DNA of 64,000 nucleotides from Macrostomum lignano (GCA_002269645.1 NIVC01000040.1:1178001-1242000); one strand, 5' to 3'; shown: positions 6,130 through 56,374, counted from the first letter of the stretch. Made by a program: numbers and translations. Notes: a model not told the origin generated them from the sequence alone.

Positions 6130-8105
6130 GGCGATCAATCAGATAAAAACCATTGCCGAGTGACTTTTAGTTTTTCAGATATCCAGAGGCGGATTAGCAG
6201 GTCTGAGAATGCCCGCTTGCGATTTGTGAAGTTTGAACTGATCCCACAGTTCTGACTTTTCACACAGACCTTGGGCATCCAGTGCGCTATCAATCAGATA
6301 AAAACCATTGCCGAGTGACTTTTAGTTTTTCAGATATCCAGAGGTGGATTAGCGGCCAATTTCCAATGCTTTCAAATGGGGAAGGACTAAAATGACCCAC
6401 TTTGATTTGTGAAGCCCGAGATGAAACCTCCGTTCTGACTTTTCACACAGACCTTGGGCATCCAGTGCGCAGTCAATCGGAGAAAGAAACATAGCCGAGG
6501 GACTTTTAGTTTTTCAGATATCCAGAGGCGGATTAGCAGGTCTGAGAATGCCCGCTTGCGATTTGTGAAGTTTGAACTGATCCCACAGTTCTGACTTTTC
6601 ACACAGACCTTGGGCATCCAGTGCGCTATCAATCAGATAAAAACCATTGCCGAGTGACTTTTAGTTTTTCAGATATCCAGAGGTGGATTAGCGGCCAATT
6701 TCCAATGCTTTCAAATGGGGAAGGACTAAAATGACCCACTTTGATTTGTGAAGCCCGAGATGAAACCTCCGTTCTGACTTTTCACACAGACCTTGGGCAT
6801 CCAGTGCGCAGTCAATCGGAGAAAGAAACATAGCCGAGGGACTTTTAGTTTTTCAGATATCCAGAGGCGGATTAGCAGGTCTGAGAATGCCCGCTTGCGA
6901 TTTGTGAAGTTTGAACTGATCCCACAGTTCTGACTTTTCACACAGACCTTGGGCATCCAGTGCGCTATCAATCAGATAAAAACCATTGCCGAGTGACTTT
7001 TAGTTTTTTAGATATCCAGAGGTGGATTAGCGGCCAATTTCCAATGCTTTCAAATGGGGAAAGACTAAAATGACCCACTTTGATTTGTGAAGCCCGAGAT
7101 GAAACCTCCGTTCTGACTTTTCACACAGACCTTGGGCATCCAGTGCGCAGCCAATCGGAGAAAGAAACATAGCCGAGGGACTTTTAGTTTTTCAGATATC
7201 CAGAGGCGGATTAGCAGGTCTGAGAATTCCCGCTTGCGATTTGTGAAGTTTGAACTGATCCTACAGTTCTGACTTTTCACACAGACCTTGGGCATCCAGT
7301 GCGCTATCAATCAGATAAAAACCATTGCCGAGTGACTTTTAGTTTTTCAGATATCCAGAGATGGATTAGCGGCCAATTTCCAATGCTTTCAAATGGGGAA
7401 AGACTAAAATGACCCACTTTGATTTGTGAAGCCCGAGATGAAACCTCCGTTCTGACTTTTCACACAGACCTTGGGCATCCAGTGCGCTATCAATCAGATA
7501 AAAACCATTGCCGAGTGACTTTTAGTTTTTCAGATATCCAGAGGCGGATTAGCAGGTCTGAGAATGCCCGCTTGCGATTTGTGAAGTTTGAACTGATCCC
7601 ACAGTTCTGACTTTTCACACAGACCTTGGGCATCCAGTGCGCTATCAATCAGATAAAAACCATTGCCGAGTGACTTTTAGTTTTTCAGATATCCAGAGAT
7701 GGATTAGCGGCCAATTTCCAATGCTTTCAAATGGGGAAAGACTAAAATGACCCACTTTGATTTGTGAAGCCCGAGATGAAACCTCCGTTCTGACTTTTCA
7801 CACAGACCTTGGGCATCCAGTGCGCAGCCAATCGGAGAAAGAAACATAGCCGAGGGACTTTTAGTTTTTCAGATATCCAGAGGCGGATTAGCAGGTCTGA
7901 GAATGCCCGCTTGCGATTTGTGAAGTTTGAACTGATCCTACAGTTCTGACTTTTCACACAGACCTTGGGCATCCAGTGCGCTATCAATCAGATAAAAACC
8001 ATTGCCGAGTGACTTTTAGTTTTTCAGATATCCAGAGGTGGATTAGCAGCCAGTTTGCAATGCTTTCAAATGGGGAAAGTCTAAAATGACCCACTTTGAT
8101 TTGTG
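6130..8105. repeat. Tandem satellite of about 12 monomers (about 155 and 184 bp) in a 339-bp higher-order repeat
   Basis: Near-identical 81-aa ORFs recur at 6387, 6726, 7065 and 7742; every monomer shares TTTTAGTTTTTCAGATATCCAGAG and CACAGACCTTGGGCATCCAGTGCG. Confidence 0.95.
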
Positions 8106-8924
8106 GAGCCCAAGTGGAGCCCATTATCCGAGGGTTTGTCACCGCAGTCCTCGAAATTCACGCAGACTTCCACTCTTGTGGTGGTAGTGATGGTCTCCAG
8201 ATTTCCATCGGGGCCAATTTGCGAAGTCTTGGTGACCGTTTCGGTTGGCTCCCAGCTACATGTAAATGGGTCGCAGAAGTTTGCCCGTCCTTTGAAAGCC
8301 TGCCTCCACGTGCTTCTGCTTCCAGTCGCATTGTCGTCGGTGTCGTTCGTGTTGTTATTTGCATCGGCGAAGAACTCGCGGAATATGTCCTCGGCAAGCC
8401 ACACACGCAGCAAAATCACGAATGTATGACAGTTGTAACATTTTGCTTTGTTATTTGCGGTAGCTTATACGAGAAGTAGAAGGGAAAACGAAGCGGGAAT
8501 GCCACTGATAATGATAATTATCAACAACAATGTCTACTGAAAATGCTTTTCGGGACAATTTTTTGCTGCCAATTCTACCGAGGCGCGGATCAAGGATTTT
8601 CCCCAGGGGAGCAAGCATATACGTCAGTGACCAATGTCCAGTTGAAACGCCCAACTCAAAGTGGAAAATGAAAATGAAAATTGAACAAAGTTTATCTTAC
8701 TGCTCTACTGTAAGTAGATAGGTGGGAGAAAAGGTGTGACAAGAAAGAAAAAAATTTAATGCTGACAAAAATTATTGCATTATGAATTCATGATGCATTT
8801 GCATCATTATTCGACAAAAATCGTTAATGGGCTCAATACACAAAGATTAAATAAATTTGTTACTTGTATGCTCGATCATCTCGCCTTAGCATCGATTTTA
8901 ACAAGAAAATTCGTCAACAATAAA

Positions 8925-9167: not shown

Positions 9168-9944
9168 TAGTTACAACTTTGGGCTTATAAAATGAGAAAA
9201 CAGTATTGAAATTGGCACAAAAAACACGAGCTTTGATTTTACATCCTGTTGCACTACTGTGGTCCTTGGGTGGAGCTCAGCTACGCAGGACTGGGGGTGG
9301 GTCTACACCACGCCCTCGGCAACTGTACAAGGCGTTTTACATGTATTCTTTATTCAAAGAATTCGTTATAATCCCTTGCTTTGTTGTCTCCCAACGAGAT
9401 GCAAAGATTGCTATAGTACGAGCGTATGTAATCCAATAAAACAAAATGATCAGCAGGAAGGACATCAGGAAAAAACAAAACAAATACGGCCGTCAGATCG
9501 AAGGTGTATTTCCTGAATACAGTATGCACGTATCAATAAAGAATCAACCTCATCTCATATCCACTAAAATGAACGCAAAACTCAATAAAAATGTTTCGTG
9601 ACGCTCGATCGTTCGATGTTGGCCTTTTGCCATAAGGTTTTAGTCAAAATGATTGCAGTGCATTGCAACCAGATCGGAATCCGAGACGTAAAGTCACATC
9701 TTGATGGTAGATAACCCACCGGCACCTGTTTACAAAGCAACCTACTTAGAAGCTCCATTAATATAAAAAGAGTCAAAGAACTCTAACGACCTCGCCGACA
9801 TAAAGCGCAATTCCACCAAGTCTTGAGCTTGAGCACCTTACTGAGCTCAGTAGCCAGCCTGCTATCGGCATGCATGCCAAACTCTGATGTAGCATTTATT
9901 GATTTTTAATTTTCACACGAGTAAACTGTTGTCTCTTGTTGCAG

Positions 9945-9956
9945 AGCACCCGAACT
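9945..9956 (+). CDS. 12-nt microexon (E-H-P-N-F linker), gene A
   Basis: ttgttgcag|AGCACCCGAACT|gtaagt. Confidence 0.85.
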
Positions 9957-12900
9957 GTAAGTTCATCATCAATCCACACTTGTAACTATAATTTATTTGT
10001 GGTATTTAAGCGCAAACGCTTTACTCAAGCTTTTGAATGTTCGGTAAATCTACACTGGTGTTGGGACAATGGCAGAAACGGATCTCGCTCTCACTCCTAA
10101 ATTGACCCAATGAGCGTCAGAGCAAGAGCTCAAGGTACCTTCGGTCCTCTGGCCGGACCCACTTCCAACTCTGAGCGGAAGATCGCGTCTTCGTTGGGAT
10201 CGACCCGTCCCCAGGCAGACACAGTACAGTACGAATCTTCAGCCTTCTAAGAAATAACGCAGCTCACTCAACATACTCTTGGATTCTACGAGTCCGACAG
10301 GCAAGCGAGCGACGGGCTTGGTTGCACGGAGCGCTGAGTAGTATCGTAGTTGACTGACTCAGCTGAGTGAGCTCTCGATCGTCTGAGTTTATCTAAGTAT
10401 CTGAGTCTGAGTAGACTCTGCGCACCCTTATGCCGTCAACCTCCACTTAAAAATCATACAAATATTGTGCACTGCTTCACCCTTGGTGCACCGACCCCGA
10501 CTACAACTGACAATGCGATTAGCGACTGTAGCTCCCTTTTACTTTACTTGTCCATGAGTTTGAGCATAAGCAGTGCTCTTTTTTATTTGCATTACAATTT
10601 CAGTTAAACTGCAAGGTTGCTACGTTCACGTCTATAAGGAAGTTGAGAATCTAAAATACCGCATATCAACCAGTGAGTCAATGACAATTGAGAGCTGCCA
10701 AAAAGACTGCAGTCGCTATACCTTCCGCTACTTTGGAGTCGCTACAACAGAATGCTTCTGCGGAGATTCAAAAATTGCTCACAAAATATCTTTGAACAGA
10801 TGTAATTACAGGTGTCCGGGAAACCCAAAGCAGATTTGCGGTGGTATTAACTCGATGGTTGTGTACGAGCAGCCCGCTACACTTGTTACAGCCTCTGCCG
10901 GTAAGAATGCCCTAATTTATTACGTTCAATTGTTCATTTATGAATGGTGTCATTGTCTCATTTCCTCGCTCGCTTATAGAGCGTAGTCTCTAGCTCACTC
11001 CTCGTCGGATTCTTAGTAAAAGAAAAAAGTGGAAGAAATTGTCGTCGACTTTATTCTTATCTATTGCAGAGAGTATGTTGTCTGACAGGTGAAACTAACA
11101 ATCTCCTTTCACGTACAGACGCTTCCCGTCAATAACTTTGCTACTTCCGAGATCGTAATCTGTGCAGTTAGTGCACAGAAATTTCATTGGGTGCCATTGT
11201 ACTGAACTAAAAACTGCTTCTGAGCAGCTGCAAGTTTGACAGTGGATGCGAAAACGAGGCTCGTTTGGGTAAAAAATAACCCACTTTCAGCACTGCCTTG
11301 TCGACGTGTGTTTATACCCAGTAGTATTTACTGTTTGCCGAATTTCGATAAAGAATTGATAAAGATTTCGATAACAAATTGCTAGCCTTTTGCGCTCAAG
11401 GCCAGCCGAAGTTTTATCATCTCACTTGCGACAAGTGACGACCTGAAAGCCGTCGTTTTTAGACACACCCAACAGTGGGGTTGGAGACCGAGGTGCGAGG
11501 GTTTCTGCTGGGTTTGCGGTGAGGTCAACCTTCATGTTGAAGGGTTGGGGGATTGACGGACCCCCAGCCGCGTGAAGTTTCGGCTCCTGAGCTGTTTTTG
11601 TACGCTTTATTTATCTATGAAGCGTAGGCTGGAATAAAGAAGCTAAGATCTAGAAAATGGGGCGGTTAACCGTGCGGGGGTGGATATACCTCCAGCAAGC
11701 TCCGGAGAATCCATCATGCAGCTGCTTTCGCTGCTTGTGCTATCCTTTTGTTTTTCAAACTCTTCAAGGACATTGATTGTGAAGTCGGTCATAAGATCCT
11801 CTATTTTAAAACTCTGGTTCAATGACTTGGGTGTATTCAGTTTCAATGGCTTGAGCAAAATGATCAGCAGGAAGGACATCGGGAAAAACAAAACAAATAC
11901 GGCCGTCAGATCGAAGGTGTTTTTCCTGAATACAGTATGCATGTACCAATAAAGAATCAACCTCATCTCATATCCATAAAGCGCAATTCCACCAAGTCTT
12001 GAGCTTGAGCACCTTACTGAGCTCAGTAGCCAGCCTGCTATCGGCATGCATGCGAAACTCTGACGTAGCATTTATTGATTTTTAATTTTCACACGAGTAA
12101 ACTGTTTTCTCTTGTTGCAGAGCACCCGAACTGTAAGTTCCTCATCAATCCACGCTTGTTATTATATTTTTTTGTGGTATTTAAGTGCAAACGCTTTACT
12201 CGAGCTTTTGAAAGTTCGGTAAATCTACACTGGTGTTGGGACAATGGCAGAAACGGATCTCGCTCTCACTCCTAAATTGACCCAATGAGCGTCAGAGCAC
12301 GAGCTCAAGGTACCTTCGGTCCTCTGGCCGGACCCACTTCCAACTCTGAGCGGAAGATCGCGTCTTCGTTTGAATCGACCCGTCCCCAGGCAGACACAGT
12401 ACAGTACGAATCTCCAGCCCTCTAAGAAATAACGCAGCTCACTCAACATGCTCTTGGATTCCACGAGTCCGACAGGCAAGCGAGCGACGGGCTTGGTTGC
12501 ACGGAGCGCTGAGTAGTATCGTAGTTGACTGACTCAGCTGAGTGAGCGTCTGAGTTTATCTGAGTATCTGAGTCTGAGTAGACTCTGCGCACCACCCATG
12601 TTATCAACCTCAACACACAAATCATACAAATATTGTGCACTGCTTCACCCTTGGGTGCACCGACCCCGACTACAACTGACAATGCGACTAGCGACTGTAG
12701 CGCCCTTCTACTTTACTTCTTTATGAGTTGTAGCAGTAGCAATTCGCTTTCTTATTCGCATTACAATTTCAGTTAAACTGCAAGGTTGCTACGTTCACCT
12801 CAATAATGAAGATGAGAATTTAAAATACCGCATATCAACCAGCGAGTCAATGACAATTGAGAGCTGCCAAAAGGACTGCAGTCGCTATACTTATCGCTAC

Positions 12901-15900
12901 TTTGGAGTCGCAAATAAAACAGAATGCTATTGCGGGGATTCACTAAGAAAAGAGCAAACTTCAAACGAATGTAATTACAGGTGTCCAGGAAATCTAAAGC
13001 AGATTTGCGGTGGTTCTGAGTACATGGTGGTGTACGAGCAGCCGGATATACTTCCTGCAGCCTCTGCTGGTGAGAATATTATAATTAATGGTCGTTGTTA
13101 GTGGTCTTGAACTCAAAGTCTTTTTTACGATTTTGTATGTCTCCATATACGTTTGAGTCTGAAGCAATCTGGAGCTAATCATGCACGTGCAGAGCAGTTG
13201 GCATTCACCAGGTGCTTGCCAAGTTACGTGGGTCTACTTGTAGAAAGCATAGGGCAGTCGTCGAAGCTTTAAAGTACGGAATACTCTGTAGTGCGCTTGT
13301 GGCCTCAGAAATAGCAGAGTTTCTCGGGCCGTATAACTGAGTTTCTATGCTCGCACGAGCGTATAGATTGATGGCCGAAGCGCGGCTACACGTGTTACGC
13401 AGAGGCGGATCGATGAGATGCCAAAGTTTAACTGAGAGTTGCTAGTAGACCAATTAATCATTAAATAGAGAGTACGAGTAACGGTAAGGCCATGGCTTAA
13501 GGGAATTGCTGAGATACCGAGACTCAGAGGCGGATGCTGATGCTGGGTATGGGCGGATGCTGGGTAGACAGCTGGCTTTGAAGCGTTTGGCTTTGAACAT
13601 CTCTTTCTTTAGAAATCTTAAAGAAGCGAGTATGTAATCTTACGAAGTCTTCTACACTTATTTTTTGGTTTAAATATTTTTCCCTCAACTGGGGGCAATG
13701 ATTGATTGCATTCGCAGAAAATGTTGTAGGGCCTCTGGGTCATTCCACAATTTCCATAGTATACTTGAGCTCTGGAACCAAACTATTTTTTACGAGTAAC
13801 ATTGAGCTTTCACGTGAATAACCGATCGTTCCGGTAGCGTACACTGCCCGAGCGGCAAGACACTGTTGTTGACTATACTTTATGGCATTGAGTGCTGAGT
13901 GGCGTTGTCAATGGATCGAGGTTTTCCTGTTTTTCTCTTCCCCATATTCCTCTTGTCGGGATTGACTTATGTCAGTTTACGACCAGTCATTGGTGGATTC
14001 AATTTCGAAAGGAATTTTGGAATATTTTCTTCCTATAACTTAGCGAATAACGCGTCTTCACTTCTCTTGCTGTTTCGCAATCTGTTCCTTAGACTACGTA
14101 TTCGCTTGCACAAACTGGTTCCCTCAACCAGCCGACGAGCAATCTTTTCACAATTTTGGCAAATGAGAAAGATTCTTTGAACACTTGAATCGGTTATTTG
14201 ATCCTTATCTGAGAGACTGTGCGGTTCACCGATCCTCTGATATTCCTCAATTGAGACTCCTCTGTATTTATAGTCAAGAGTGAGATGGGGTGAAGCGCGT
14301 TTAAACAAATCGGCTTTTATTATCATTCTGGCGAGAATTTAAATGAAGGAGCTGCTAACAAAAAATAGCAACATCAATAATACAGTACTAAATACGCTGA
14401 CAGATTAAAGAGATGAAGATCATACACGTATCGAGAAGCAATGGGCCTCATCTTCAGATTCAAATTCACACGAAGCTCAACATAAAAGTTTTGTGCCGTT
14501 TATTCGACTGAATAAAGCCTTTAGTCTGGAGTTTTTAGTCGAAACCGACAGTCGAATTGCAGTTTCACCAAGTCTTAGCACTTTACATGGAGCAGTAGCC
14601 AAACCTGCTATTGACAAATATTCAAACTACGACGTAGCTTTTACTGATTTTCCATTTTCAATTTTCAAACTGCTTTCTCCTCTTTCTCCTGTTGCAGAGC
14701 ACCAGAACTGTAAGTTCATCATCAACCCACCAATATATGCTTATAATTTCTTTGTGGTATTTAAAGTGCCAACGCTGCACTCAACTTTTTGAATGTTCGG
14801 TAAATTTACACTGGTGTTGGGACAATGACAGAAAATGATCTCACTCTCACTCCTAAATTAATCCAATTAATCTTGGAGCACGAGCTCAAGGTAGCTTCGG
14901 TCGTCTGGCCGGACCCACTTCGAACTCTGAGTGGAAGATCGCGTCTTCGTTGGGATCGACACGTCTCCAGGCAGACACAATACAGTACGAGTCTCCAGCC
15001 TGAAGTGTTAGTGGTGATCAGTGACTCGAAAATTCCCACTTCTAGACACTGGGGAACAAGTGCCACGAGGTGTATGCAAAATCAAATAACTCTTACTGCA
15101 GCGGATCCTTTAGTAGCTTTTAGACGTCTTGGTTTGGCTTAGGTGACTCGTTACTGTTGTGTATTGAACGCGTGGGTTTTTGTGCGAGCGAGAGTTGAGT
15201 TCCGTGGATCACAAGTCTTCTCGAAGCTGGACATGAAGACAGGGTACCTCCATTTCGAACTTCACCACGACAGTCGATACCTAACAGCTTTTATCACAGA
15301 CGAAGGCCTGTACCAGTTCTGCCGCGTCCCGTTCGGCCTCAGCAGCGCGGCAGGGTTCTTCCAGAAGGCCATGGCTCGCATCCTGCAAGGCCTGCCAGGA
15401 ACGGTCAACGCAGTCGATGACATCCTGGTGCACGGCAAGACAAAGAAGGAGCACGACGACAACCTGAGCCGGACACTAGAACGTCTTCGAGAGAACAACA
15501 TCGTGCTCAGCGATAAGTGCGTCTTCGCCCAACCGGCAGTGGACTTCCATGGTTTCCGCATTTCCGGCAACGGCATCCAAGCGATCGACTCGTACGTGAA
15601 GGCAATCAAGGAGACGCCTCAGCCGAGTAACACCAAGGAGGCAGCTGCATTCCTCGGAGCGACAAACTTCTACAGCCGGTTCGTCCATGCCTACTCGGAA
15701 ACCACGGAGCCGATCCGCCGGCTGCTACGCAAAGATGAGCCGTGGTCGTGGGGTCCAGAGCAAGATGGCGCTTTCCAGAAAATCAAGAGGCAGCTGACCA
15801 TGGCGCCAGTCCTAAAGGCATTTGACCCCAAATCCGAGACAATCATCCGATGCGACGCCAGTGCCCACGGCATCGGCGCCGTGCTGGCACAGATACAGCT

Positions 15901-18461
15901 CGGCGAGGAGCACCCGATTGCCTACAGCTCGCGGTCCCTCACTTCACCGGAGCGGAACTACTCGGTCGGGGAGAAGGAGGCGCTGGCTGTCGTATGGGCG
16001 GTCGAGAAGTGGCACCTGTTCACCTATGGCCGGCCAGTGACCGTCTACACAGACCATAGCACGCTGAGCACTCTGCTGACCGCGGGCAGTCAAGGAGTCC
16101 GGCCGCTGCGCATCCTTCGGTGGACAGAGCGTCTTAGGGCATACCCCCTGGTGACCATTCGCTACGTGCGCGGCCGAGACAACACTATCGCCGACCTGCA
16201 TGTCTAGGCAACAACCAAACGTCCAGGAGGATCCGCAGAGCAACACGGACGACCAGGAGATCGGCCGAATCCTGATGGCGCAGCTGGCTCCAGCAGTCAA
16301 CCTGGACGAGGTGCGCCAAGAAACGGCCAGCGACGAAGTCCTGCAAGCGGTTTCTCGCTTCATCAAGGAGGGGTGGCCGGCGTCCAAGCAACTGGCACCG
16401 GAGCTGCAAGCCTACTACCGCGCAAAGGACGAACTCTACCTGTTCGGCGACGGCTGCGTGGCTCGTGGCCAGGCTACCGTCATCCCAGCTACACTGCAGA
16501 ACCGGGTTCTCAATATGGCGCACGAAGGCCACCACGGAATTGTGCGGACCAAGCAGCGGTGCCGATCTGCAGCTTGGTGGCCCGGTATCGACAAGGACAT
16601 CGAGTCGGCGGTGAAGGACTGTACGGCCTGCGCGCTGGCTGGCAAGGCGTCTCGACCCACGCGTTCAATACACAACAGTTACCTCCGGGAGTCCTTGACT
16701 TTTATCTGTGGGTCGACCAAAACCGAGAGCGAATCAGAATTTTTTGACGGTCCTCGAGCTCGGAATTAACAATAGAACGTGCGCCCTAATGAACAATTGA
16801 ATTCTCTGAATAACTGTATTAGGTCCTCCGGAAGGGCGTCTTATTCGCTACATCTGAAACGTAATGGATAACTCAAATCAAATCAATAATCCTCTAGGAA
16901 TATATCCTAGGAAACAAGGAGGCCTTTCTCAAATGTATCGACAATGAACTGCTCTCGTATAACTCAATTAATCAACTTGTTATCACTAACAATCAAAGAA
17001 CTGAATCCTGTAAACGCTTACAAATTGGACAAGTGTGGTCCCTCAGAGATTGGTCTTCTTCTTTGTTCCTTCAGAGTCTTCTTAGAGACCGCTCTGAGTC
17101 TGAACTTTTTACTCAGATTTTCACTTGTATTTATAACAAAATTTTGGAGAAAAACCGGTTTAGGATCGGATACTTACTTACTCCAATTATGTTTGATTAA
17201 GCTGTCATGTATGTTTGAGCATTACCATTATATGTGGTAAAGCAAATACAGCTGTTGGAAACCGGTTCCTTGATATAAAATGTTGGTCCCATGTGGGGTT
17301 CTGAATCACTCTGGTTGCGCATGATTCCTAAAAATAGATATGACTCATTCTAGAATAAATTGACTTTCTTTGAAGAATAATTTTAGTAGGGCATTACGGT
17401 ATGGTCTAATAAGTCTCTACAAGCCCTCTAAGAAATAACGCAGCTCACTCAACACACTCTTGGTCTCTTGCTCTCACTCAACAACCACAACACACAAATC
17501 ATATAAATATTGTGCACTGTTTCATCCTTGGGTACACCGATCCCGACTACAACTGGCAATGTGATTAGCGCCCTTTCACTTTACTTGTCCATGAGTTTGT
17601 TTAATTGTTTTGCATGAAAACCTTTCAGTTAAACTGGAAGGCTGCTACTTTCATTACGACGATCCGAGTTCCAACCTACGCCGCTACAAGTCATCCAACG
17701 AGTCCATGACAATCGAGAGCTGCCAAAAGGACTGCAGTGTCACTACTGATCGCTACTTTGGAGTAATAAGTGGAACGCATTGCTACTGCGGTGATTTAAT
17801 TATGAGTGCACAATTGTCTTTGAAAAAGTGTGATTACAGGTGTCCGGGAAATCCAAAGCAGATCTGCGGTGGTTCTATTACAATGGTTGTGTACGAGCAG
17901 CCCGCCTCTGCTGGTGAGTATAATCTATAAATTAATGTTCACTTCTCTTTAGTGTCGAATTCAAACTTGGGTTTTCATGATTTTTTTATAATTCGTGCTC
18001 CGTCTCCGTATGGTTTTGTGCCTGAAGCAGTGAATGAAGGTTCGCAGGGAAGTTGCTGAGATGCCAATGCTGACGAGAGGATTTCTGAGATAATAATGCT
18101 TAACTGGGAGTTGCTACTAGGCCTATAAATAATAACAATAATAATTTATTACACCTGCCCTAATGGACATGTGTGCAACCGACTGCTCAGCCGCAGTTAT
18201 TGCGCGGTGCATCTGATAGCTGTGTATGGCTGTTCAATCCAAGGACTGGACTGGGGGGTCACGCACACACTCTTAATTACCCAAGCTATAAATGCTAGCA
18301 CTCATTTTACAGCTGGGTGAACTGAAGCAATGCAGTGAAGCAATGAATTATCTTGCTCAAGGACACAAATTGTTCTGACTTGCTCGAGAGTCGAACCCCC
18401 GACCTTCAAGTCATGAGTCCGACGCTTTAACTACTAGGCTACAACCCCATGTAGGCCAAGC

Positions 18462-21500: not shown

Positions 21501-22771
21501 GAATGAGCATAATCTTTAGGAATCAAACTTCACGCCAAGCGCAACTGAAAAGTTTCGTGTTGTTTTTTTGACTGCCTGTTGGCGTTTTGTCTGAAGTTTT
21601 AACAATGTTGGCATTTATCATTGTTGGGAGTTATTTCACTTGCACCTCCTTAAAAACAACCTACTGATAACTCCACTATTGTAAAAATACTCTTCAACCA
21701 CTCAAACAGCCTCTTAGATTGAAATTTCGATTTCACCGTGTCTTGAACATATGTAGGACGACATATGTAGGACATGTATACAAAATCCTGAAGTAGGCAT
21801 TATTGATTTTCAATTTTAAAGCGACTAAATTGCTGTCTCTTGTTGCAGAGCACCCGAACTGTAAGTTCATCCTCAATCCACCAATATATACGAGTAGCTA
21901 TAATTTCCTTCGTTGTATTTATAGTGCAAACGCTTTATTTAACCTTCTGAATGTTTGGTAAAGGGGTTGGTGTGGGGACAATGGCCGAAACGGATCTCAC
22001 TCTCACTCCTAAATTGAACCAATGTCTTCTGGCCGGACCCACTTTGAACTCTGAGCAGAAGATCGCGTCTTCGTTGGGATCGACCCGTCCCCAGGCAGAC
22101 ACAGTACAGTACGATTCTCCAGCCCTCTAAGAAATAATGCGGCTCACTCAACATGCTCTTGGATTCCACGAGTCCGACAGACAAGCGACGGGCTTGGTTG
22201 CACGGAGCTCTGAGTAGTATCGTAGTTGACTGACTCAGCTGAGTGAGCTTTCGATCGTCTGAGTTTATCTGAGTATCTGAGTCTGAGTAGACTCTGCCCA
22301 CCACCCATGCCATCAACCTCAAGAAACAAATGATTTAATATTGTACACTGCTTCACCCTTGGTGCACCGATCCCGACTACAACTGACGATGCGATTAGCG
22401 CCCTTTCACTTCACTTGTTCATGAGATTAAGCATGAGCAGTTCGTTAATTTGTTGTTCGCTTAATGTTTAATTAGTTTGCATAAAAATTTCAGTTAAACT
22501 GCTCGGTTGCTACTTACATTCCAAAAAGCAGAATAACCTACGCCTCTACATATCATCCAGCGAGTCAATGACAATCGAGAGCTGCCGAAAGGACTGCAGT
22601 GTCACTACTGCTCCTTACTTTGGAGTAATAAGTGGAACATATTGCTACTGCGGTGAATCAGTAATGGGGACGCAATTGTCATTAAGAAAATGTGATTACA
22701 GGTGTCCGGGAAATCCAAAGCAGATCTGCGGTGGTTTTGACTCGATGGTAGTGTACGAGCATCTTTTATGA
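9945..22771 (+). CDS. Gene A: 5'-incomplete tandem WSC-domain protein (4 WSC domains in window)
   Basis: join(9945-9956,10604-10900,12121-12132,12773-13069,14698-14709,17629-17913,21849-21860,22494-22771). All introns GT-AG, phase 1; ends in TGA. No signal-peptide exon found upstream within the window. Confidence 0.85.
10604..10900 (+). CDS. WSC domain exon A1 (297 nt)
   Basis: ttcag acceptor; [36 protein letters not shown]; G|gtaaga donor. Confidence 0.92.
12121..12132 (+). CDS. 12-nt microexon, gene A
   Basis: ttgttgcag|AGCACCCGAACT|gtaagt. Confidence 0.85.
12773..13069 (+). CDS. WSC domain exon A2 (297 nt)
   Basis: 8-Cys WSC pattern; ttcag acceptor, gtgaga donor. Confidence 0.92.
14698..14709 (+). 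CDS. 12-nt microexon (E-H-Q-N), gene A
   Basis: gttgcag|AGCACCAGAACT|gtaagt. Confidence 0.85.
15155..16677 (+). mobile_element. 1523-bp non-autonomous element: Gypsy pol fragment bounded by perfect 23-bp TIRs, 5-bp TSD GTTAC
   Basis: Left TGTTGTGTATTGAACGCGTGGGT (15155-15177); right ACCCACGCGTTCAATACACAACA (16655-16677); GTTAC at 15150-15154 and 16678-16682; empty sites at about 54577 and 47603. Confidence 0.92.
15197..16660 (+). pseudogene. pol: Ty3/Gypsy pol fragment: partial RT, RNase H and integrase HHCC zinc finger, with one +1 frameshift
   Basis: FSKLD..GY, FCRVPFGL, AVDDIL, CDAS..GIGAVL, ERNYS..EKEALA, YTDH; H-H-C-C in AHEGHHG..WWPGIDKDI..CTAC; frameshift near 16196; no integrase catalytic core. 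Confidence 0.92.
17629..17913 (+). CDS. WSC domain exon A3 (285 nt)
   Basis: 8-Cys WSC pattern; ttcag acceptor, gtgagt donor. Confidence 0.92.
18126..18450 (-). mobile_element. tRNA-derived CORE-type SINE
   Basis: Minus strand: A-box TAGCCTAGTAG, CTCATGA loop, B-box GGTTCGACT, CORE-like TGTGTCCTTGAGCAAG..CAGCTGTAAAATGAG, (TTA)-rich tail. Confidence 0.75.
18465..18530. repeat. (AG)n microsatellite
   Basis: Pure AG run. Confidence 0.98.
18545..19200 (+). pseudogene. Degenerate non-LTR retrotransposon RT fragment
   Basis: LIVYADDL motif, then [16 protein letters not shown] and [17 protein letters not shown] with frameshifts and stops. Confidence 0.75.
19245..21453 (+). mobile_element. 2209-bp solo-LTR-like insertion, TGATGTAACC...GGTTACATCA, 4-bp TSD TTTC
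   Basis: 10-bp perfect inverted ends; TTTC at 19241-19244 and 21454-21457; empty site ATATATATTTCCTGAATATA near 57221. Confidence 0.85.
20100..20186 (+). promoter_or_regulatory. Pol II promoter-like cluster inside the insertion: CRE (TGACGTCA), CCAAT box, TATA box (TATAAAA 20178-20184)
   Basis: Motifs occur in canonical order and spacing. Confidence 0.55.
21849..21860 (+). CDS. 12-nt microexon, gene A
   Basis: tgttgcag|AGCACCCGAACT|gtaagt. Confidence 0.85.
22494..22771 (+). CDS. Terminal WSC domain exon A4 (ends MVVYEHLL-stop)
   Basis: Open from the acceptor to TGA at 22769-22771; 8 Cys. Confidence 0.9.
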
Positions 22772-22855: not shown

Positions 22856-23529
22856 CGCGATCTTTAAACATTGTCCGCAGTGTCCGTGTTTCCTCAAACA
22901 ATATATACTTCTTAAGTACCGCACTGACGCAGAAAGTTTTGCTGTTAAAAGTGCTGCAGCAGAGCCTCATATGTGTAACTCTGTGGTCACAGCCTTATAT
23001 TCTAGTGTAGAGCACAGACTTCAACAGCTGGGTGTACGAGTGCACGTGTGGTAAGAATGGGGACCTGTCGTTCAGTAGCAGGAAGGAGAAGGTGAGCTTT
23101 AGAAGGATGCGCACAGGCCACGATTGATCGAATTGGCGGCCTACAGGAAGAGGATCGGGCTTCAACAAGACGAAAGCTACTGCCGGATGTTGCGGCTTGG
23201 AAGATGAGACAATGCAGCATGTCTGGGACATCCCGGCGACGTGTAAAGGGAGGAGGGTGTGGTGTTGCAGCGGCCTTCGGGCGGTCTGTGAACAACCGGA
23301 AGAAGCTATGAAGTACTGGGAGTGATGGAGAGGTCACCCGCCGTGGGGGGCCAGGGAGGAGGCCCCTAGCCGTGGATGAAAGGTGGTTGGCAACAACAAC
23401 AACTGCAGCAGATGTGACGAAGCGAGTGACGAAAATTGACGAGAGAAAGAGACCGGTGCGATTGACCGCCGACACCGACTCCGAAGACGAGACCGACAGC
23501 CCGAGTAAAGAGAAGTCAAGCGAAGAGTT

Positions 23530-24190
23530 GAGAGGCCGGCAGACGGGAGGCCATAAGAGGCCGGCAGACGGGAGGCCATGAGAGGCCAGCAGACGGGAGG
23601 CCATGAGAGGCCAGCAGACGGGAGGCCATGAGAGGCCGGCAGACGGGAGGCCATGAGAGGCCAGCAGACGGGAGGCCATGAGAGGCCAGCAGACGGGAGG
23701 CCATGAGAGGCCAGCAGACGGGAGGCCATGAGAGGCCGGCAGACGGGAGGCCATGAGAGGCCGGCAGACGGGAGGCCATGAGAGGCCAGCAGACGGGAGG
23801 CCATGAGAGGCCAGCAGACGGGAGGCCATGAGAGGCCGGCAGACGGGAGGCCATGAGAGGCCGGCAGACGGGAGGCCATGAGAGGCCAGCAGACGGGAGG
23901 CCATGAGAGGCCAGCAGACGGGAGGCCATGAGAGGCCGGCAGACGGGAGGCCATGAGAGGCCAGCAGACGGGAGGCCATGAGAGGCCAGCAGACGGGAGG
24001 CCATAAGAGGCCGGCAGACGGGAGGCCATGAGAGGCCAGCAGACGGGAGGCCATGAGAGGTCGGCAGACGGGAGGCCATGAGAGGCCGGCAGACGGGAGG
24101 CCATGAGAGGCCGGCAGACGGGAGGCCATGAGAAGTCGGCAGACGGGAGGCCATGAGAGGCCAGCAGACGGGAGGCCATGAGAGGTCGGC
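23530..24190. repeat. 25-bp GC-rich minisatellite GAGAGGCC(A/G)GCAGACGGGAGGCCAT, about 26 copies
   Basis: Direct tandem periodicity. Confidence 0.97.
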
Positions 24191-24685
24191 GGCATTATGA
24201 TGAGCAACGAAACCCGAAACCAGATGCCAGATGAAGGGATGATGATTTGACGAGAAAATTGGTGGGCGGCTGCAATGGCATGGCCCTTTGTTTTAACTAA
24301 TTTATTCACGTTAGGGAATTTTTTTTTCGGGCGCCATGTAGAGAAAAATAAGAAAGACTACCTAATTTGAATTAAAAAATTATACATAAGTAGGGCGCAC
24401 GCCAAGAGCCAATCAGAAGGAAGCGAGGGGAGAGAGATGAGACTAACGACATTGAACTGGCCAGAGAGAGAGAGAAAACAGAGTAAACAACGACAAGTGC
24501 AAATGAACTGAAGAAGTGAGCAAGAAAGTCTCAAAACTTGCAGCGTGGGTTCAGCAAACGCCAAATTATTGTCTGCGAATTTAAAGAAGCAGGCCGAATG
24601 ATGCTTTTGTCATGGAAAATAATAATCAAGTGGAAATCCTCATTCGCTGTAGCAGCCACTGCCACATGACTGCAATCGGCCATTG

Positions 24686-47600: not shown

Positions 47601-50600
47601 TCGTTACCTCCGGGAGTCCTTGACTTTTATCTGTAGGTCGACCAAAGACGAGAGCGAATCAGAATTCCTTGACGGTCCTCGAGCTCGGAATTAACAATAG
47701 AACGCCCTAATGAACAATCGAATTCTCTAAGAACGTAAATGCTTACAAATTGGACAAGTGTGGTCCCTCAGAGATTGGTCTTCTTCTTTGTTCCTTCGGA
47801 GTCTTCTTAGAGACCGCTCTGAGTCTGAATTTTTGACTCGGATTTTCACTTATATTTATAGCAAAATTTTGGAGAAAAAACGGTTTGGGATCGGATATTT
47901 ACTTGGGTCATTCATGTTTGATTAAGCTTTCACGTATGCTTGAGCATTACCATATATGGGGTTAAGCAAATACAGCTGTTGGAATCCGGTTCCTTGATCA
48001 AACAATGTTGGTCTCACGTGGGGTTCTTAATCACTCTGTTAACGCGTGATTCCTAAAAATAGATATGACTCATTCTAGAATAAATTGACTTTCTTAGAAT
48101 ATTACTTTAAGTAGGGCATCACGGTATGGTTCCGGCTCTCTACAAGGTTCCAGCAGGCCCCAGCCCCCCAGCCAGTGTAAAGGCGCCAGGTCGGGTTGAC
48201 AGCCAACGCCAGAGCCCTTCCCCAAAGGAGCGGTCATTTAGAACCCGTGTGGCACCAGCACTAGCCACCTGCCCTGCAAAAGGCTGCAGGGGGTCCGCCC
48301 TCCATAGCAGGGGACAAGAACGAAGAAGCTCCAAAAAAATGAAGAGCTGGCAGATGTCACGGAGTCCCGCGGTTTAAGTTGCCATTGCAAATATACTTGA
48401 TGCAAGGTAAAAAATAAAAAGTTCAACTAATGTCATTTGTGAGTAGTTACAACTTTGGGCTTATAAAATGAGAAAACAGTATAAAAATAAAACTTTCACG
48501 ACAACTACCGGTATACATGCTTTAAAAACAACAGCTAGGCACGCATGCTAAGTAAAAAAATGGTAATCTTCGCTGCCCTAGATCAAATGTAATCAATATT
48601 TTTGTGATTAAAAGTGATTTATTCCTATTTTTTATGAAATTGGCACAAAAAACAGGAGCTTTGATTTTACATCCTGTTTTACTACTGTGGTCCTTGGGTG
48701 GAGCTCAGCTACGCAGGACTGGGGGTGGGTCTACACCACGCCCTCAGCAACTGTACAAGGCGTTTTACATGTATTCTTTATTCAAAGAATTCGTTATAAT
48801 CCCTTGCTTTGTTGTCTCCCAACGAGATGCAAAGATTGCTATAGTACGAGCGTATGTAATCCAATAAAACAAAATGATCAGCAGGAAGGACATCAGGAAA
48901 AAACAAAACAAATACGGCCGTCAGATCGAAGGTGTATTTCCTGAATACAGTATGCACGTATCAATAAAGAATCAACCTCATCTCATATCCACTAAAATGA
49001 ACGCAAAACTCAATAAAAATGTTTCGTGACGCTCGATCGTTCGATGTTGGCCTTTTGCCATAAGGTTTTAGTCAAAATGATTGCAGTGCATTGCAACCAG
49101 ATCGGAATCCGAGACGTAAAGTCACATCTTGATGGTAGATAACCCACCGGCACCTGTTTACATAGCAACCTACTTAGAAGCTCCATTAATATAAAAAGAG
49201 TCAAAGAACTCTAACGACCTCGCCGACATAAAGCGCAATTCCACCAAGTCTTGAGCTTGAGCACCTTACTGAGCTCAGTAGCCAGCCTGCTATCGGCATG
49301 CATGCCAAACTCTGATGTAGCATTTATTGATTTTTAATTTTCACACGAGTAAACTGTTGTCTCTTGTTGCAGAGCACCCGAACTGTAAGTTCATCATCAA
49401 TCCACACTTGTAACTATAATTTATTTGTGGTATTTAAGTACAAACGCTTTACTCAAGCTTTTGAATGTTCGATAAATCTACACTGGTGTTGGGACAATGG
49501 CAGAAACGGATCTCGCTCTCACTCCTATATTGACCCAATGAGCGTAGAGCAAGAGCTCAAGGTACCTTCGGTCCTCTGGCCGGACCCACTTCCAACTCTG
49601 AGCGGAAGATCGCGTCTTCGTTGGGATCGACGCGTCCCCAGGCAGACACAGTACAGTACGAATCTTCAGCCTTCTAAGAAATAACGCAGCTCACTCAACA
49701 TACTCTTGGATTCCACGAGTCCGACAGGCAAGCGAGCGACGGGCTTGGTTGCACGGAGCGCTGAGTAGTATCGTAGTTGACTGACTCAGCTGAGTGAGCT
49801 CTCGATCGTCTGAGTTTATCTAAGTATCTGAGTCTGAGTAGACTCTGCGCACCCTTATGCCGTCAACCTCCACTTAAAAATCATACAAATATTGTGCACT
49901 GCTTCACCCTTGGTGCACCGACCCCGACTACAACTGACAATGCGATTAGCGACTGTAGCTCCCTTTTACTTTACTTGTCCATGAGTTTGAGCATAAGCAG
50001 TGCTCTTTTTTATTTGCATTACAATTTCAGTTAAACTGCAAGGTTGCTACGTTCACGTCTATAAGGAAGTTGAGAATCTAAAATACCGCATATCAACCAG
50101 TGAGTCAATGACAATTGAGAGCTGCCAAAAGGACTGCAGTCGTTATACCTTCCGCTACTTTGGAGTCGCTACAACAGAATGCTTCTGCGGTGATTCAAAA
50201 ATTGCTAACAAAATATCTTTGAACAGATGTAATTACAGGTGTCCGGGAAACCCAAAGCAGATTTGCGGTGGTATTAACTCGATGGTTGTGTACGAGCAGC
50301 CCGCTACACTTGTTACAGCCTCTGCCGGTAAGAATGCCCTAATTTATTACGTTCAATTGTTCATTTATGAATGGTGTCATTGTCTCATTTCCTCGCTCGC
50401 TTATAGAGCGTAGTCTCTAGCTCACTCCTCGTCGGATTCTTAGTAAAAGAAAAAAGTGGAAGAAATTGTCGTCGACTTTATTCTTATCTATTGCAGAGAG
50501 TATGTTGTCTGACAGGTGAAACTAACAATCTCCTTTCACGTACAGACGCTTCCCGTCAATAACTTTGCTACTTCCGAGATCGTAATCTGTGCAGTTAGTG

Positions 50601-53600: not shown

Positions 53601-56374
53601 TCTTTGAACACTTGAATCGGTTATTTGATCCTTATCTGAGAGACTGTGCGGTTCACCGATCCTCTGATATTCCTCAATTGAGACTCCTCTGTATTTATAG
53701 TCAAGAGTGAGATGGGGTGAAGCGCGTTTAAACAAATCGGCTTTTATTATCATTCTGGCGAGAATTTAAATGAAGGAGCTGCTAACAAAAAATAGCAACA
53801 TCAATAATACAGTACTAAATACGCTGACAGATTAAAGAGATGAAGATCATACACGTATCGAGAAGCAATGGGCCTCATCTTCAGATTCAAATTCACACGA
53901 AGCTCAACATAAAAGTTTTGTGCCGTTTATTCGACTGAATAAAGCCTTTAGTCTGGAGTTTTTAGTCGAAACCGACAGTCGAATTGCAGTTTCACCAAGT
54001 CTTAGCACTTTACATGGAGCAGTAGCCAAACCTGCTATTGACAAATATTCAAACTACGACGTAGCTTTTACTGATTTTCCATTTTCAATTTTCAAACTGC
54101 TTTCTCCTCTTTCTCCTGTTGCAGAGCACCAGAACTGTAAGTTCATCATCAACCCACCAATATATGCTTATAATTTCTTTGTGGTATTTAAAGTGCCAAC
54201 GCTGCACTCAACTTTTTGAATGTTCGGTAAATTTACACTGGTGTTGGGACAATGACAGAAAATGATCTCACTCTCACTCCTAAATTAATCCAATTAATCT
54301 TGGAGCACGAGCTCAAGGTAGCTTCGGTCGTCTGGCCGGACCCACTTCGAACTCTGAGTGGAAGATCGCGTCTTCGTTGGGATCGACACGTCTCCAGGCA
54401 GACACAATACAGTACGAGTCTCCAGCCTGAAGTGTTAGTGGTGATCAGTGACTCGAAAATTCCCACTTCTAGACACTGGGGAACAAGTGCCACGAGGTGT
54501 ATGCAAAATCAAATAACTCTTACTGCAGCGGATCCTTTAGTAGCTTTTAGACGTCTTGGTTTGGCTTAGGTGACTCGTTACCTCCGGGAGTCCTTGACTT
54601 TTATCTGTGGGTCGACCAAAACCGAGAGCGAATCAGAATTTTTTGACGGTCCTCGAGCTCGGAATTAACAATAGAACGTGCGCCCTAATGAACAATTGAA
54701 TTCTCTGAATAACTGTATTAGGTCCTCCTGAAGGGCGTCTTATTCGCTACATCTGAAACGTAACGGATAACTCAAATCAAATCAATAATCCTCTAGGAAT
54801 ATATCCCAGGAAACAAGGAGGCCTTTCTCAAATGTATCGACAATGAACTGCTCTCGTATAACTCAATTAATCAACTTGTTATCACTAACAATCAAAGAAC
54901 TGAATCCTGTAAACGCTTACCAATTGGACAAGTGTGGTCCCTCAGAGATTGGTCTTCTTCTTTGTTCCTTCAGAGTCTTCTTAAAGACCGCTCTGAGTCT
55001 GAACTTTTTACTCAGATTTTCACTTATATTTATAGCAAAATTTTGGAGAAAAACCGGTTTAGGATCGGATACTTACTTACTCCAATTATGTTTGATTAAG
55101 CTGTCATGTATGTTTGATCATTACCATTATATGTGGTAAAGCAAATACAGCTGTTGGAAACCGGTTCCTTGATATAAAATGTTGGTCCCATGTGGGGTTC
55201 TGAATCACTCTGGTTGCGCATGATTCCTAAAAATAGATATGACTCATTCTAGAATAAATTGACTTTCTTTGAAGAATAATTTTAGTAGGGCATTACGGTA
55301 TGGTCTAATAAGTCTCTACAAGCCCTCTAAGAAATAACGCAGCTCACTCAACACACTCTTGGTCTCTTGCTCTCACTCAACAACCACAACACACAAATCA
55401 TATAAATATTGTGCACTGTTTCATCCTTGGGTACACCGATCCCGACTACAACTGGCAATGTGATTAGCGCCCTTTCACTTTACTTGTCCATGAGTTTGTT
55501 TAATTGTTTTGCATGAAAACCTTTCAGTTAAACTGGAAGGCTGCTACTTTCATTACGACGATCCGAGTTCCAACCTACGCCGCTACAAGTCATCCAACGA
55601 GTCCATGACAATCGAGAGCTGCCAAAAGGACTGCAGTGTCACTACTGATCGCTACTTTGGAGTAATAAGTGGAACGCATTGCTACTGCGGTGATTTAATT
55701 ATGAGTGCACAATTGTCTTTGAAAAAGTGTGATTACAGGTGTCCGGGAAATCCAAAGCAGATCTGCGGTGGTTCTATTACAATGGTTGTGTACGAGCAGC
55801 CCGCCTCTGCTGGTGAGTATAATCTATAAATCAATGTTCACTCTCATTTAATTATCGAATTCAATTTATTCAAACTTGGGTTTTCAGGATTTTTTTATAA
55901 TTCGTGCTCCGTCTCCGTATGGTTTTGTGCCTGAAGCAGTGAATGAAGGTTTGCAGGGAAGTTGCTGAGATGCCAATGCTGACGAGAGGATTTCTGAGAT
56001 AATAATGCTTTACTGGGAGTTGCTACTAGGCCTATAAATAATAACAATAATAATTTATTACACCTGCCCTAATGGACATGTGTGCAACCGACTGCTCAGC
56101 CGCAGTTATTGCGCGGTGCATCTGATAGCTGTGTATGGCTGTTCAATCCAAGGACTGGACTGGGGGGTCACGCACACACTCTTAATTACCCAAGCTATAA
56201 ATGCTGGCACTCATTTTACAGCTGGGTGAACTGAAGCAATGCAGTGAAGCAATGAATTATCTTGCTCAAGGACACAAATTGTTCTGACTTGCTCGAGAAT
56301 CGAACCCCCGACCTTCAAGTCATGAGTCCGACGCTTTAACTACTAGGCTACAACCCCATGTAGGCCAAGCATCA

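What the first reader, a model, noticed from the sequence alone, without database searches (positions are those of the whole stretch)
15150..16682. Gypsy pol fragment packaged between perfect 23-bp terminal inverted repeats with a 5-bp TSD
Seen: 1523 bp with TGTTG...CAACA ends in a perfect 23-bp TIR, GTTAC duplicated, and two empty paralogous sites in the same window. The cargo is a contiguous GC-rich RT-RNaseH-integrase zinc finger segment with one frameshift and no stops. There is no LTR, PBS, PPT, gag, protease or integrase core. The right TIR overlaps the reading frame at SRPT (CCCACG), suggesting a microhomology junction. Known: LTR elements have direct repeats with only short inverted tips; Ginger/TDD DNA transposons have TGT-starting TIRs, 4-5 bp TSDs and Gypsy-related integrases. 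Inference: this is either a Ginger-type non-autonomous transposon that captured retrotransposon pol, or an aberrant cDNA with two inverted copies of one LTR end inserted by a Gypsy integrase. Either would be a hybrid between LTR retrotransposons and TIR DNA transposons. The RT motif is also non-canonical (AVDD).
Basis: partly seen in the sequence, partly recalled or inferred. Interest (0 to 1): 0.85.

Follow-up and report, generated by a model that had tools for sequence, protein, structure and literature searches.

The report
Aberrant Gypsy insertion, two U5 ends
A 1.5-kb piece of a Gypsy-type retrotransposon's polymerase gene was inserted into this genome with both of its ends made from the same tip of the element's long terminal repeat, so it looks like a DNA transposon but is most likely a one-off faulty product of reverse transcription.

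Summary
A 1523-bp insertion (15155-16677) has perfect 23-bp inverted ends and a 5-bp GTTAC duplication. Two uninterrupted paralogous sites lie in the same window. The cargo is a Ty3/Gypsy pol segment (partial RT, RNase H, integrase zinc finger) with one frameshift and no in-frame stops.

The outer 14-15 nt of both inverted ends match the PBS-adjacent (U5) tip of the LTR in three related elements: exactly in L002 (15 nt) and L003 (14 nt), with one mismatch in L001. In L001 and L002, where both LTR tips are readable, they are inverted copies of each other for only 5-7 nt. The window's left end does not resemble their U3 starts. Its reverse complement is collinear with their U5 region for about 42-58 nt.

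So the element carries two U5 ends in inverted orientation. The Ginger alternative fails on TIR length, TSD length, RT content and the LTR origin of the ends.

It is most likely a dead-end, single-copy by-product. The closest parallel is a 1988 MoMLV provirus, known here only from its title, that integrated through two U3 ends. The parent element's own LTR was not available, which is the main remaining uncertainty.

The parts
15150..15154 (.). Left copy of the 5-bp target-site duplication (GTTAC)
   Evidence: Present once at both empty paralogous sites
15155..15177 (+). Left arm of the perfect 23-bp inverted repeat, TGTTGTGTATTGAACGCGTGGGT
   Evidence: The outer 15 nt are the reverse complement of the LTR 3' (U5) tip of L002
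15155..15212 (-). Inverted U5-like LTR segment, about 42-58 nt. The inner limit is uncertain. The last ~16 nt (15197-15212) resemble both the LTR antisense and the RT coding sequence, and are the likely switch zone
   Evidence: The reverse complement of 15181-15212 matches the L001 LTR 26/32 (3-4 of 2000 shuffles as good). It is collinear with the L002 U5 end (9 of 2000; anchored test 221 of 5000). There is no similarity to the relatives' U3 starts
15197..16658 (+). Ty3/Gypsy pol fragment, truncated at both ends, from mid-RT to just past the integrase zinc finger. Broken gene: one frameshift, no in-frame stops
   Evidence: It is 73-82% nt and 81-85% aa identical to the Macrostomum lignano element in L001 / P0010
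15197..15562 (+). Partial reverse transcriptase domain (Pfam RVT_1, profile positions 59-205 of 205). The catalytic motif reads AVDD
15749..16144 (+). RNase H domain (Pfam RT_RNaseH_2 and RT_RNaseH)
   Evidence: Ty3 RT/RNase H structures 4ol8 and 7q5b
16482..16640 (+). Integrase H2C2 zinc-binding domain (profile positions 1-56 of 59). No catalytic core follows
16655..16677 (+). Right arm of the inverted repeat: the U5 tip in its native orientation relative to pol. The inner 4 nt (ACCC) overlap the pol reading frame, marking the microhomology junction
16678..16682 (.). Right copy of the 5-bp target-site duplication (GTTAC)
54577..54581 (.). Empty site 1: a single GTTAC in the young paralogue (flanks 99-100% identical)
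47603..47607 (.). Empty site 2: a single GTTAC in an older paralogue (87-92% identical)

Best explanation
This is a single, dead-end insertion of an aberrant cDNA from a Ty3/Gypsy retrotransposon. Both of its termini are the U5 (PBS-adjacent) tip of the LTR, in inverted orientation.

Proposed sequence of events (inferred):
1. tRNA-primed minus-strand DNA begins with the complement of the U5 tip, 5'-TGTTGTG....
2. One such nascent strand, about 42-58 nt long, did not make the normal first strand transfer. It paired instead with already-made minus-strand DNA in the RT-coding region, at a ~16-nt stretch that resembles the U5 antisense. It was then extended in the pol-sense direction.
3. A second switch occurred at a 4-nt ACCC microhomology. 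It skipped from just after the integrase zinc finger to the last 23 nt of U5 on the template. The same joint could equally have formed by a premature jump of the template strand itself.
4. The result is a 1.5-kb duplex in which each 5' end is a tRNA-primed U5 start. It therefore has two identical integrase attachment sites ending in CA-3'.
5. The element's integrase joined this molecule to the chromosome in the usual concerted way, producing a 5-bp duplication of GTTAC.

The insertion went into one copy of a recent segmental duplication. It has no PBS, PPT, R region, complete LTR, gag, protease or integrase core, so it cannot go through another retrotransposition cycle.

Shown directly: the insertion, the TSD, the inverted ends, the pol content, and the U5 identity of both tips. 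Inferred: the template switches and the role of integrase. Joining of cDNA pieces by cellular end-joining before integration would give the same product.
For: Insertion and TSD. The insertion is exactly 1523 bp plus a 5-bp TSD, measured against two empty paralogous sites.

Termini. The ends read TGTTG...CAACA. This fits the TGTNR pattern of Gypsy LTRs stated in PMC2836005.

The tips are U5 tips. The outer 15 nt of both arms (GTTCAATACACAACA) are identical to the last 15 nt of the 218-bp LTR of the related element in L002. That LTR is followed directly by the PBS TTGGCGACGAGAATGG and then gag. L001 has the same tip with one mismatch before the same PBS. L003 has the same 14-nt tip before a near-identical PBS. 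In L002 the tip lies on the pol-sense strand. The window's right arm is therefore in native orientation and the left arm is inverted.

Relatives do not have long native tip inversions. Their U3 starts follow a PPT (L002: gtagggaggg | TGTTGTGGGGCACGC; L001: TGTTAGGAGGGCGC and TGTTATGGCGGGCGC). They are inverted copies of the U5 tip for only 5-7 nt.

The left end is U5, not U3. In sense orientation it shows no similarity to those U3 starts (1992 and 348 of 2000 shuffles score as well). Its reverse complement matches the LTRs significantly and collinearly with the U5 end (9 and 4 of 2000).

Junctions. The right junction shares ACCC between pol (the Arg-Pro codons conserved in P0010 and L002) and U5. 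The left junction lies in 16 nt that match the L001 pol 11/16 and the L001 LTR antisense 12-13/16.

Age and precedent. The pol segment is contiguous with only one frameshift, so it is recently derived from a working copy. Integration through two copies of the same LTR end has a documented retroviral precedent: Colicelli & Goff 1988, J Virol 62:633-636, citation verified.
Against: The true parent element and its LTR were not available. The three relatives are different families (73-82% nt identity in pol), so the U3/U5 assignment rests on extrapolation. The similarity of the inner left arm to the relatives' U5 is only moderately significant (p about 0.002-0.04). A polarity-inverting template switch is a rare event, and none has been documented for this lineage. 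Integrase involvement is inferred only from the termini and the TSD. The TSD length of this family could not be checked on a full-length copy. Only one copy is visible, and the source genome could not be searched, so a multi-copy family cannot be excluded.
Confidence: 0.65

Rival explanations
1. Doubly deleted cDNA or provirus with ordinary U3 and U5 ends. Under this reading the parent family's LTR natively has a long (23-58 nt) terminal inverted repeat. The left end is then a normal U3 start. Two orientation-preserving deletions (U3 to mid-RT, and integrase zinc finger to U5 tip) produced the element before or after integration.
For: It needs only simple deletion-type template switches. Microhomology is present at the right junction. 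LTRs evolve fast, and the true parent LTR was not seen.
Against: Both relatives with readable LTRs have only 5-7 nt of native tip inversion. Their U3 starts resemble each other but not the window's left end. A 42-58 nt native TIR in an LTR would be unusual. Two post-integration deletions that leave both tips intact are improbable in a locus whose flanks are 99.7% identical to the empty paralogue.
Confidence: 0.15
2. Member of a mobile, non-autonomous TIR family (Ginger-like, or mobilised as DNA by a Gypsy-type integrase) that carries a captured pol fragment and moves by cut-and-paste.
For: TGTNR termini, perfect TIRs, a TSD and a precise empty site are what a DNA transposon would show (PMC2836005). 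The genome outside the 64-kb window was not searchable.
Against: The ends are LTR U5 sequence found next to a PBS in three LTR elements. The arms are asymmetric, about 42-58 nt against 19-23 nt of U5. Per, metazoan Ginger elements have 40-270 bp TIRs, 4-bp TSDs (CCGG/CCGT, or within RTATAY) and no RT or RNase H. No second copy of the 23-mer or of its 11-nt tip occurs in the window. No DDE or integrase-core ORF is in the window.
Confidence: 0.07
3. Solo LTR of an element whose LTR had absorbed a pol fragment, or an assembly or rearrangement artefact.
For: TG...CA ends, short inverted tips and a 5-bp TSD are also the signature of a solo LTR.
Against: Between the U5-derived tips everything is pol coding sequence. 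There is no room for U3 promoter, R or the remainder of U5. Both tips are U5-type rather than U3 and U5. An artefact would not produce an exact TSD and a perfect TIR against two clean empty sites.
Confidence: 0.03

Closest known systems
MoMLV provirus with LTRs in inverted orientation, integrated through two U3 sequences (Colicelli & Goff 1988, J Virol 62:633-636; citation verified in the reference list of PMC5778647; the paper itself was not held)
   Same: An integrated retroelement DNA whose two termini are inverted copies of the same LTR end. It shows that an integrase can use two identical attachment sites in vivo.
   Different: That case is a retrovirus recovered in cell culture, using U3 ends and whole LTRs. 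This case is a natural Gypsy-lineage insertion using U5 ends. Only 23 and ~42-58 nt of LTR are retained, around a 1.46-kb pol fragment. Details of the 1988 case beyond its title could not be read.
Ginger1 and Ginger2/TDD DNA transposons (PMC2836005)
   Same: TGTNR termini, terminal inverted repeats, a short TSD, and a relationship to Gypsy integrase.
   Different: Ginger elements have 40-270 bp TIRs and a 4-bp TSD in metazoa (5 bp only in Dictyostelium TDD-4/5). They encode a DDE integrase-like transposase and no RT or RNase H, and they form multi-copy families. Here the TIR is 23 bp, the TSD is 5 bp, RT and RNase H are present, the integrase core is absent, and the ends are LTR-derived.
Complex LTR-retrotransposon insertions created by template switching during reverse transcription (Sabot & Schulman 2007, PMC1950507)
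   Same: Aberrant products of reverse transcription that are integrated as a unit and bounded by a single TSD.
   Different: Per its abstract, that paper concerns complex elements in which two elements share an LTR. This case has an internal fragment with inverted copies of one LTR tip.
Non-autonomous LTR derivatives (solo LTRs, TRIM, LARD)
   Same: TG...CA termini, a 5-bp TSD and no full coding capacity (established knowledge).
   Different: Those keep direct LTRs, or are a single whole LTR, together with PBS and PPT. This element has neither.
DIRS-type retroelements
   Same: Gypsy-related RT and RNase H combined with inverted terminal repeats (established knowledge).
   Different: DIRS elements use a tyrosine recombinase, make no TSD and lack an H2C2 integrase finger. 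This element has the H2C2 finger and a 5-bp TSD.

Membership tests
Ty3/Gypsy LTR retrotransposon (origin of the sequence) | pol domain order RT - RNase H - integrase, with Ty3-like RT and RNase H | tested here: met
   Pfam RVT_1, RT_RNaseH(_2) and Integrase_H2C2 occur in that order. The best PDB hits are Ty3 RT/RNase H and Ty3 Gag-Pol, E about 1e-53.
Ty3/Gypsy LTR retrotransposon (as a complete or canonical element) | Two direct LTRs, with PBS after the 5' LTR and PPT before the 3' LTR | tested here: not met
   There are no direct repeats and no PBS-like site in the window. Only 23 and ~42-58 nt of LTR tip are present, in inverted orientation.
Ty3/Gypsy LTR retrotransposon (integration signature) | TG...CA (TGTNR) termini and a 4-6 bp TSD | tested here: met
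   Ends read TGTTG...CAACA and the TSD is GTTAC, measured against two empty sites. The TGTNR pattern is from PMC2836005; the TSD range is established knowledge.
Ty3/Gypsy LTR retrotransposon (integration signature) | Termini identical to the family's own LTR tips | tested here: inconclusive
   The outer 14-15 nt equal the U5 tip of relatives L002 and L003, and of L001 with one mismatch. The parent family itself was not available.
Ginger1 / Ginger2 DNA transposons | TIRs of about 40-270 bp (Ginger1) or 50-180 bp (Ginger2) | tested here: not met
   The inverted repeat is 23 bp. The definition is from PMC2836005.
Ginger1 / Ginger2 DNA transposons | 4-bp TSD in metazoa (CCGG/CCGT for Ginger1; an RTATAY target for Ginger2) | tested here: not met
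   The TSD is 5 bp, GTTAC.
Ginger1 / Ginger2 DNA transposons | Encodes, or derives from an element that encodes, a DDE integrase-like transposase without RT or RNase H | tested here: not met
   RT and RNase H are present and there is no rve core.
Ginger1 / Ginger2 DNA transposons | Multiple copies sharing the same termini | not testable with these tools
There are no further copies in the window or in the metagenome and viral collections, but those collections do not hold the source genome.
DIRS-type retroelements | Tyrosine recombinase, no TSD, and inverted terminal repeats with an internal complementary region | tested here: not met
   An H2C2 integrase finger and a 5-bp TSD are present. No internal copy of the termini was found.
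Solo LTR | A whole LTR (U3-R-U5), identical to the LTRs of full-length copies | tested here: not met
   The interior is pol coding sequence, and both tips are U5-type.

The most novel reading that the evidence does not exclude
The element is not a dead end. It would be the founder, or a member, of a family of TIR-bounded DNA segments that a Gypsy-lineage integrase can excise and reinsert. That would make it a living intermediate on the path from LTR retrotransposon to Ginger-like cut-and-paste transposon. The inverted U5 att sites would have been created in one step by faulty reverse transcription.
Probability: 0.05. Interest if true: 0.85.

Novelty: new variant of a known kind. Interest (0 to 1): 0.5.

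Why it matters
This is a natural, cleanly resolved record, with the empty site preserved, of two things. First, a Gypsy-lineage integrase accepted a DNA with two copies of the same LTR end. Second, reverse transcription can produce a short, TIR-bounded, integrase-compatible molecule in one faulty cycle. Together these give a concrete picture of how TIR elements with retrotransposon-type termini could arise, which bears on the debated relationship between LTR retrotransposons and Ginger-type transposons. It is also a practical warning for annotation. Tools that classify by TIR plus TSD will call such fragments DNA transposons, and tools that look for LTR pairs will miss them. As a single immobile copy it has no evident consequence for the host locus.

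Tried and rejected
1. I first thought the inner 12 nt of the right arm were native pol sequence, because L001 reads ...GCGTTC at the homologous place. That would have made the left arm a snap-back copy of the right junction. I dropped this when L002, L001 and L003 showed that TTCAATACACAACA is the LTR tip, and when the left arm turned out to continue as U5 beyond 23 nt.
2. Exact searches for the 23-mer found nothing in the metagenome and viral collections. The tip+PBS pattern found nothing in the viral or prokaryotic genome collections. All of this is uninformative, because none of these collections holds the source genome.
3. A protein search with the integrase zinc-finger segment alone returned nothing, although P0010 is 51% identical to that segment. 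This looks like a limit of the word index rather than a real absence.
4. Exact-product look-ups for four window ORFs all came back not on record, so the source species and contig remain unidentified. The nearest named relative is a Macrostomum lignano protein.
5. Folding the left end as single-stranded DNA showed no notable structure.
6. Autointegration was rejected. It joins LTR tips to internal DNA, whereas here the tips are outermost and the inner U5 sequence is what joins pol.
7. Transib, another superfamily with a 5-bp TSD, was considered from memory only. It was set aside because the ends are LTR-derived.
Full report
OBSERVATION

Window 15155-16677 is a 1523-bp block. It starts with TGTTGTGTATTGAACGCGTGGGT and ends with the exact reverse complement of that sequence. 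At up to three mismatches these are the only two occurrences in the window, against zero expected from shuffles. GTTAC flanks the block on both sides. GTTAC is nearly self-complementary, so the repeat finder reports 28-nt arms at 96%.

The window contains a ~17-kb segmental duplication, 9207-~26000 against 48635-~62900. It is 99.7% identical over 5.9 kb to the left of the block and 98.3% over 1.8 kb to the right. In the second copy the two flanks meet at a single GTTAC (54577-54581). A third, older paralogue (87-92% identical) also has a single GTTAC, at 47603-47607. The block is therefore a genuine insertion with a 5-bp target-site duplication, and it is younger than the duplication.

CARGO

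Pfam finds three domains in order:
- RVT_1, from profile position 59 of 205 (window 15197-15562).
- RT_RNaseH and RT_RNaseH_2 (15749-16144).
- Integrase_H2C2, positions 1-56 of 59 (16482-16640).

There is no integrase catalytic core. The best solved relatives are Ty3 RT/RNase H and Ty3 Gag-Pol, at E about 1e-53. The reading frame carries one frameshift and no in-frame stop. The RT catalytic motif reads A-V-D-D; at its first position 36 of 57 aligned homologues have Y. GC is 0.55-0.56 against 0.40-0.45 in the flanks. Nothing else in the window resembles pol, gag, an LTR or a PBS, and no tRNA gene is present.

RELATIVES

Three related elements were recovered.

L001. The closest protein in the public collection is P0010 of Macrostomum lignano, 81% identical over the part it covers (85% in alignment A4). 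Its locus L001 (NIVC01000237.1) holds a degraded element of a different family, 73-82% nt identical, with another LTR element nested inside it.

L002. A profile search with P0010 plus the two window reading frames, kept as separate rows, found P0097. Its 6.4-kb metagenome contig is L002. L002 reads: integrase, then PPT (gtagggaggg), then a 218-bp LTR (5291-5508), then PBS (TTGGCGACGAGAATGG), then gag.

L003. A pattern scan for tip plus PBS found a third contig, L003.

THE ENDS ARE U5 TIPS

The last 15 nt of the L002 LTR, directly before the PBS, are GTTCAATACACAACA. This is identical to the outer 15 nt of both arms of the window repeat. A chance 15-mer match in 13 kb is about 1e-5, before even requiring that it sit at the LTR/PBS boundary.

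L001's 5' LTR, which actually runs to about 4219, ends ...TTCAAACACAACA, then TA, then the same PBS. L003 reads ...AATTCAATACACAACA | TTGGCGACGAGAACGG.

The outer 14-15 nt of the window's TIR are therefore the conserved U5 attachment site of this Gypsy lineage. On the pol-sense strand the right arm is in native orientation and the left arm is inverted.

THE LEFT END IS NOT A U3 START

In L002 the U3 start is TGTTGTGGGGCACGC.... In L001 it is TGTTATGGCGGGCGC and TGTTAGGAGGGCGC. These resemble each other and follow a PPT. They are inverted copies of the U5 tip for only 5-7 nt.

In sense orientation, the window's left end has no significant similarity to these U3 starts: 1992 and 348 of 2000 shuffles score as well. 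Its reverse complement matches the LTRs and is collinear with their U5 ends:
- 26/32 against the L001 LTR (3-4 of 2000 shuffles as good).
- A gapped match running into the tip of the L002 LTR (9 of 2000).
- An anchored test that excludes the shared tip (221 of 5000).

The right arm shows no LTR similarity inward of the repeat. The left end therefore carries about 42-58 nt of inverted U5, and the right end about 19-23 nt of U5. The perfect 23-bp TIR is simply the part the two have in common.

JUNCTIONS

Right junction. The pol frame runs into the repeat: the Arg-Pro codons conserved in P0010 and L002 end in ACCC. The U5 sequence, as carried by the longer left arm, reads ...AAACCC at the same place. 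This is a 4-nt microhomology.

Left junction. Window 15197-15212 matches the L001 RT coding sequence 11/16 and the L001 LTR antisense 12-13/16. The switch apparently happened in a stretch where U5 antisense and RT coding sequence resemble each other.

MECHANISM (INFERRED)

Minus-strand DNA primed by tRNA at the PBS begins with the complement of the U5 tip. A duplex in which both 5' ends are such starts has two U5 attachment sites.

The simplest route has three steps. A nascent minus-strand strong-stop DNA of about 42-58 nt mis-pairs with already-made minus-strand DNA in the RT region. It is extended in the pol-sense direction. A second jump at ACCC then takes synthesis from just past the zinc finger to the last 23 nt of U5. 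The second jump could equally have been a premature jump of the template strand.

Integrase then binds the two identical CA-3' ends and performs a normal concerted integration with a 5-bp stagger. Cellular end-joining of cDNA pieces before integration would give the same product.

The product lacks PBS, PPT, R, a complete LTR, gag, protease and the integrase core. It is therefore a dead end for retrotransposition. One frameshift in 1.46 kb and perfect arms fit a recent event.

COMPARISON WITH KNOWN SYSTEMS

Ginger. Ginger1 has 40-270 bp TIRs and 4-bp CCGG/CCGT TSDs. Metazoan Ginger2 has 50-180 bp TIRs, 4-bp TSDs and an RTATAY target preference. Both encode a DDE transposase and no RT or RNase H. 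Both share the TGTNR termini of Gypsy LTRs (PMC2836005). Only the TGTNR feature is met here, and it is equally a Gypsy LTR feature. The element should not be filed as Ginger.

Canonical retrotransposon forms. It is not a canonical LTR retrotransposon, a solo LTR, a TRIM or LARD, or a DIRS element (see the membership table).

Closest documented parallel. This is a MoMLV provirus with inverted LTRs that integrated through two U3 sequences (Colicelli & Goff 1988). The citation was verified, but the paper was not readable.

Other aberrant products. Template switching that yields complex integrated LTR-retrotransposon structures is documented in Triticeae (PMC1950507).

RIVALS

The main rival is that the unseen parent LTR natively has a long inverted repeat. 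The element would then be a doubly deleted cDNA with ordinary U3 and U5 ends. The two relatives argue against this but cannot exclude it (0.15). A mobile TIR family is not excluded, because the source genome could not be searched (0.07). A solo LTR or an artefact is unlikely (0.03).

VERDICT

This is a new variant of a known kind: an integrated product of faulty reverse transcription with two U5 ends. It is of moderate interest, as a natural demonstration and as an annotation pitfall. It is not evidence for a new class of hybrid transposon.

The source species was not identified. The nearest named relative is from the flatworm Macrostomum lignano.

Noticed in passing
window 9207-~26000 and 48635-~62900: A ~17-kb segmental duplication about 39 kb apart. 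Identity falls from 99.7% at its left end through 98% and 96% to 83% at its right end. It differs by several indels besides the insertion studied. It could be a true paralogy or two haplotypes placed in tandem by the assembler.
   Followed up: partly
window 6135-8111; 23529-24190; 24685-25255; 27362-29050; 32086-36700: Several tandem arrays: a 339-bp unit x5.8 (97% matches), a GC-rich 25-bp unit x26, a 20-bp unit x28, a 60-bp unit x28, and a degenerate 36/60/113-bp satellite field. The 25-bp and 20-bp arrays lie inside the segmental duplication.
   Followed up: no
window 3766-5742, minus strand: A 658-codon open reading frame with no Pfam hit. Its Cys/His-rich central part looks transposase-like by eye. 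The product is not on record by exact look-up.
   Followed up: partly
window 30298-30873, plus strand: A 191-aa ORF with a clear WSC carbohydrate-binding domain (Pfam E = 1.9e-16). It is probably an exon of a host gene.
   Followed up: no
window 14560-15000 and copies at 9807-10245, 11983-12419, 49235-49672, 51410-51847, 21806-22124, 57611-57898: The insertion target lies inside a dispersed repeat of a few hundred bp that occurs at least seven times in the window at 75-80% identity. The Gypsy fragment therefore landed in older repetitive DNA.
   Followed up: no
L002 401-4182: A non-LTR retrotransposon (endonuclease, RT and RNase H; 1249-aa ORF) ends in a short A-rich tail. It abuts the related Gypsy element exactly at its integrase zinc finger. 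Downstream, a single LTR is followed by PBS and gag. This indicates either a tandem pair sharing one LTR or an assembly path through a collapsed LTR.
   Followed up: partly
L001 4882-9229: A second, unrelated LTR element on the minus strand (849-aa gag-pol ORF plus an integrase ORF) is nested inside the Macrostomum lignano Gypsy relative. That relative's 3' LTR is truncated after 12165.
   Followed up: partly
window 37968-38208 and L001 20420-20670: Apart from pol, this 250-bp stretch at 80% identity is the only similarity between the window and the M. lignano locus. It is a weak hint that the window comes from a related flatworm.
   Followed up: no
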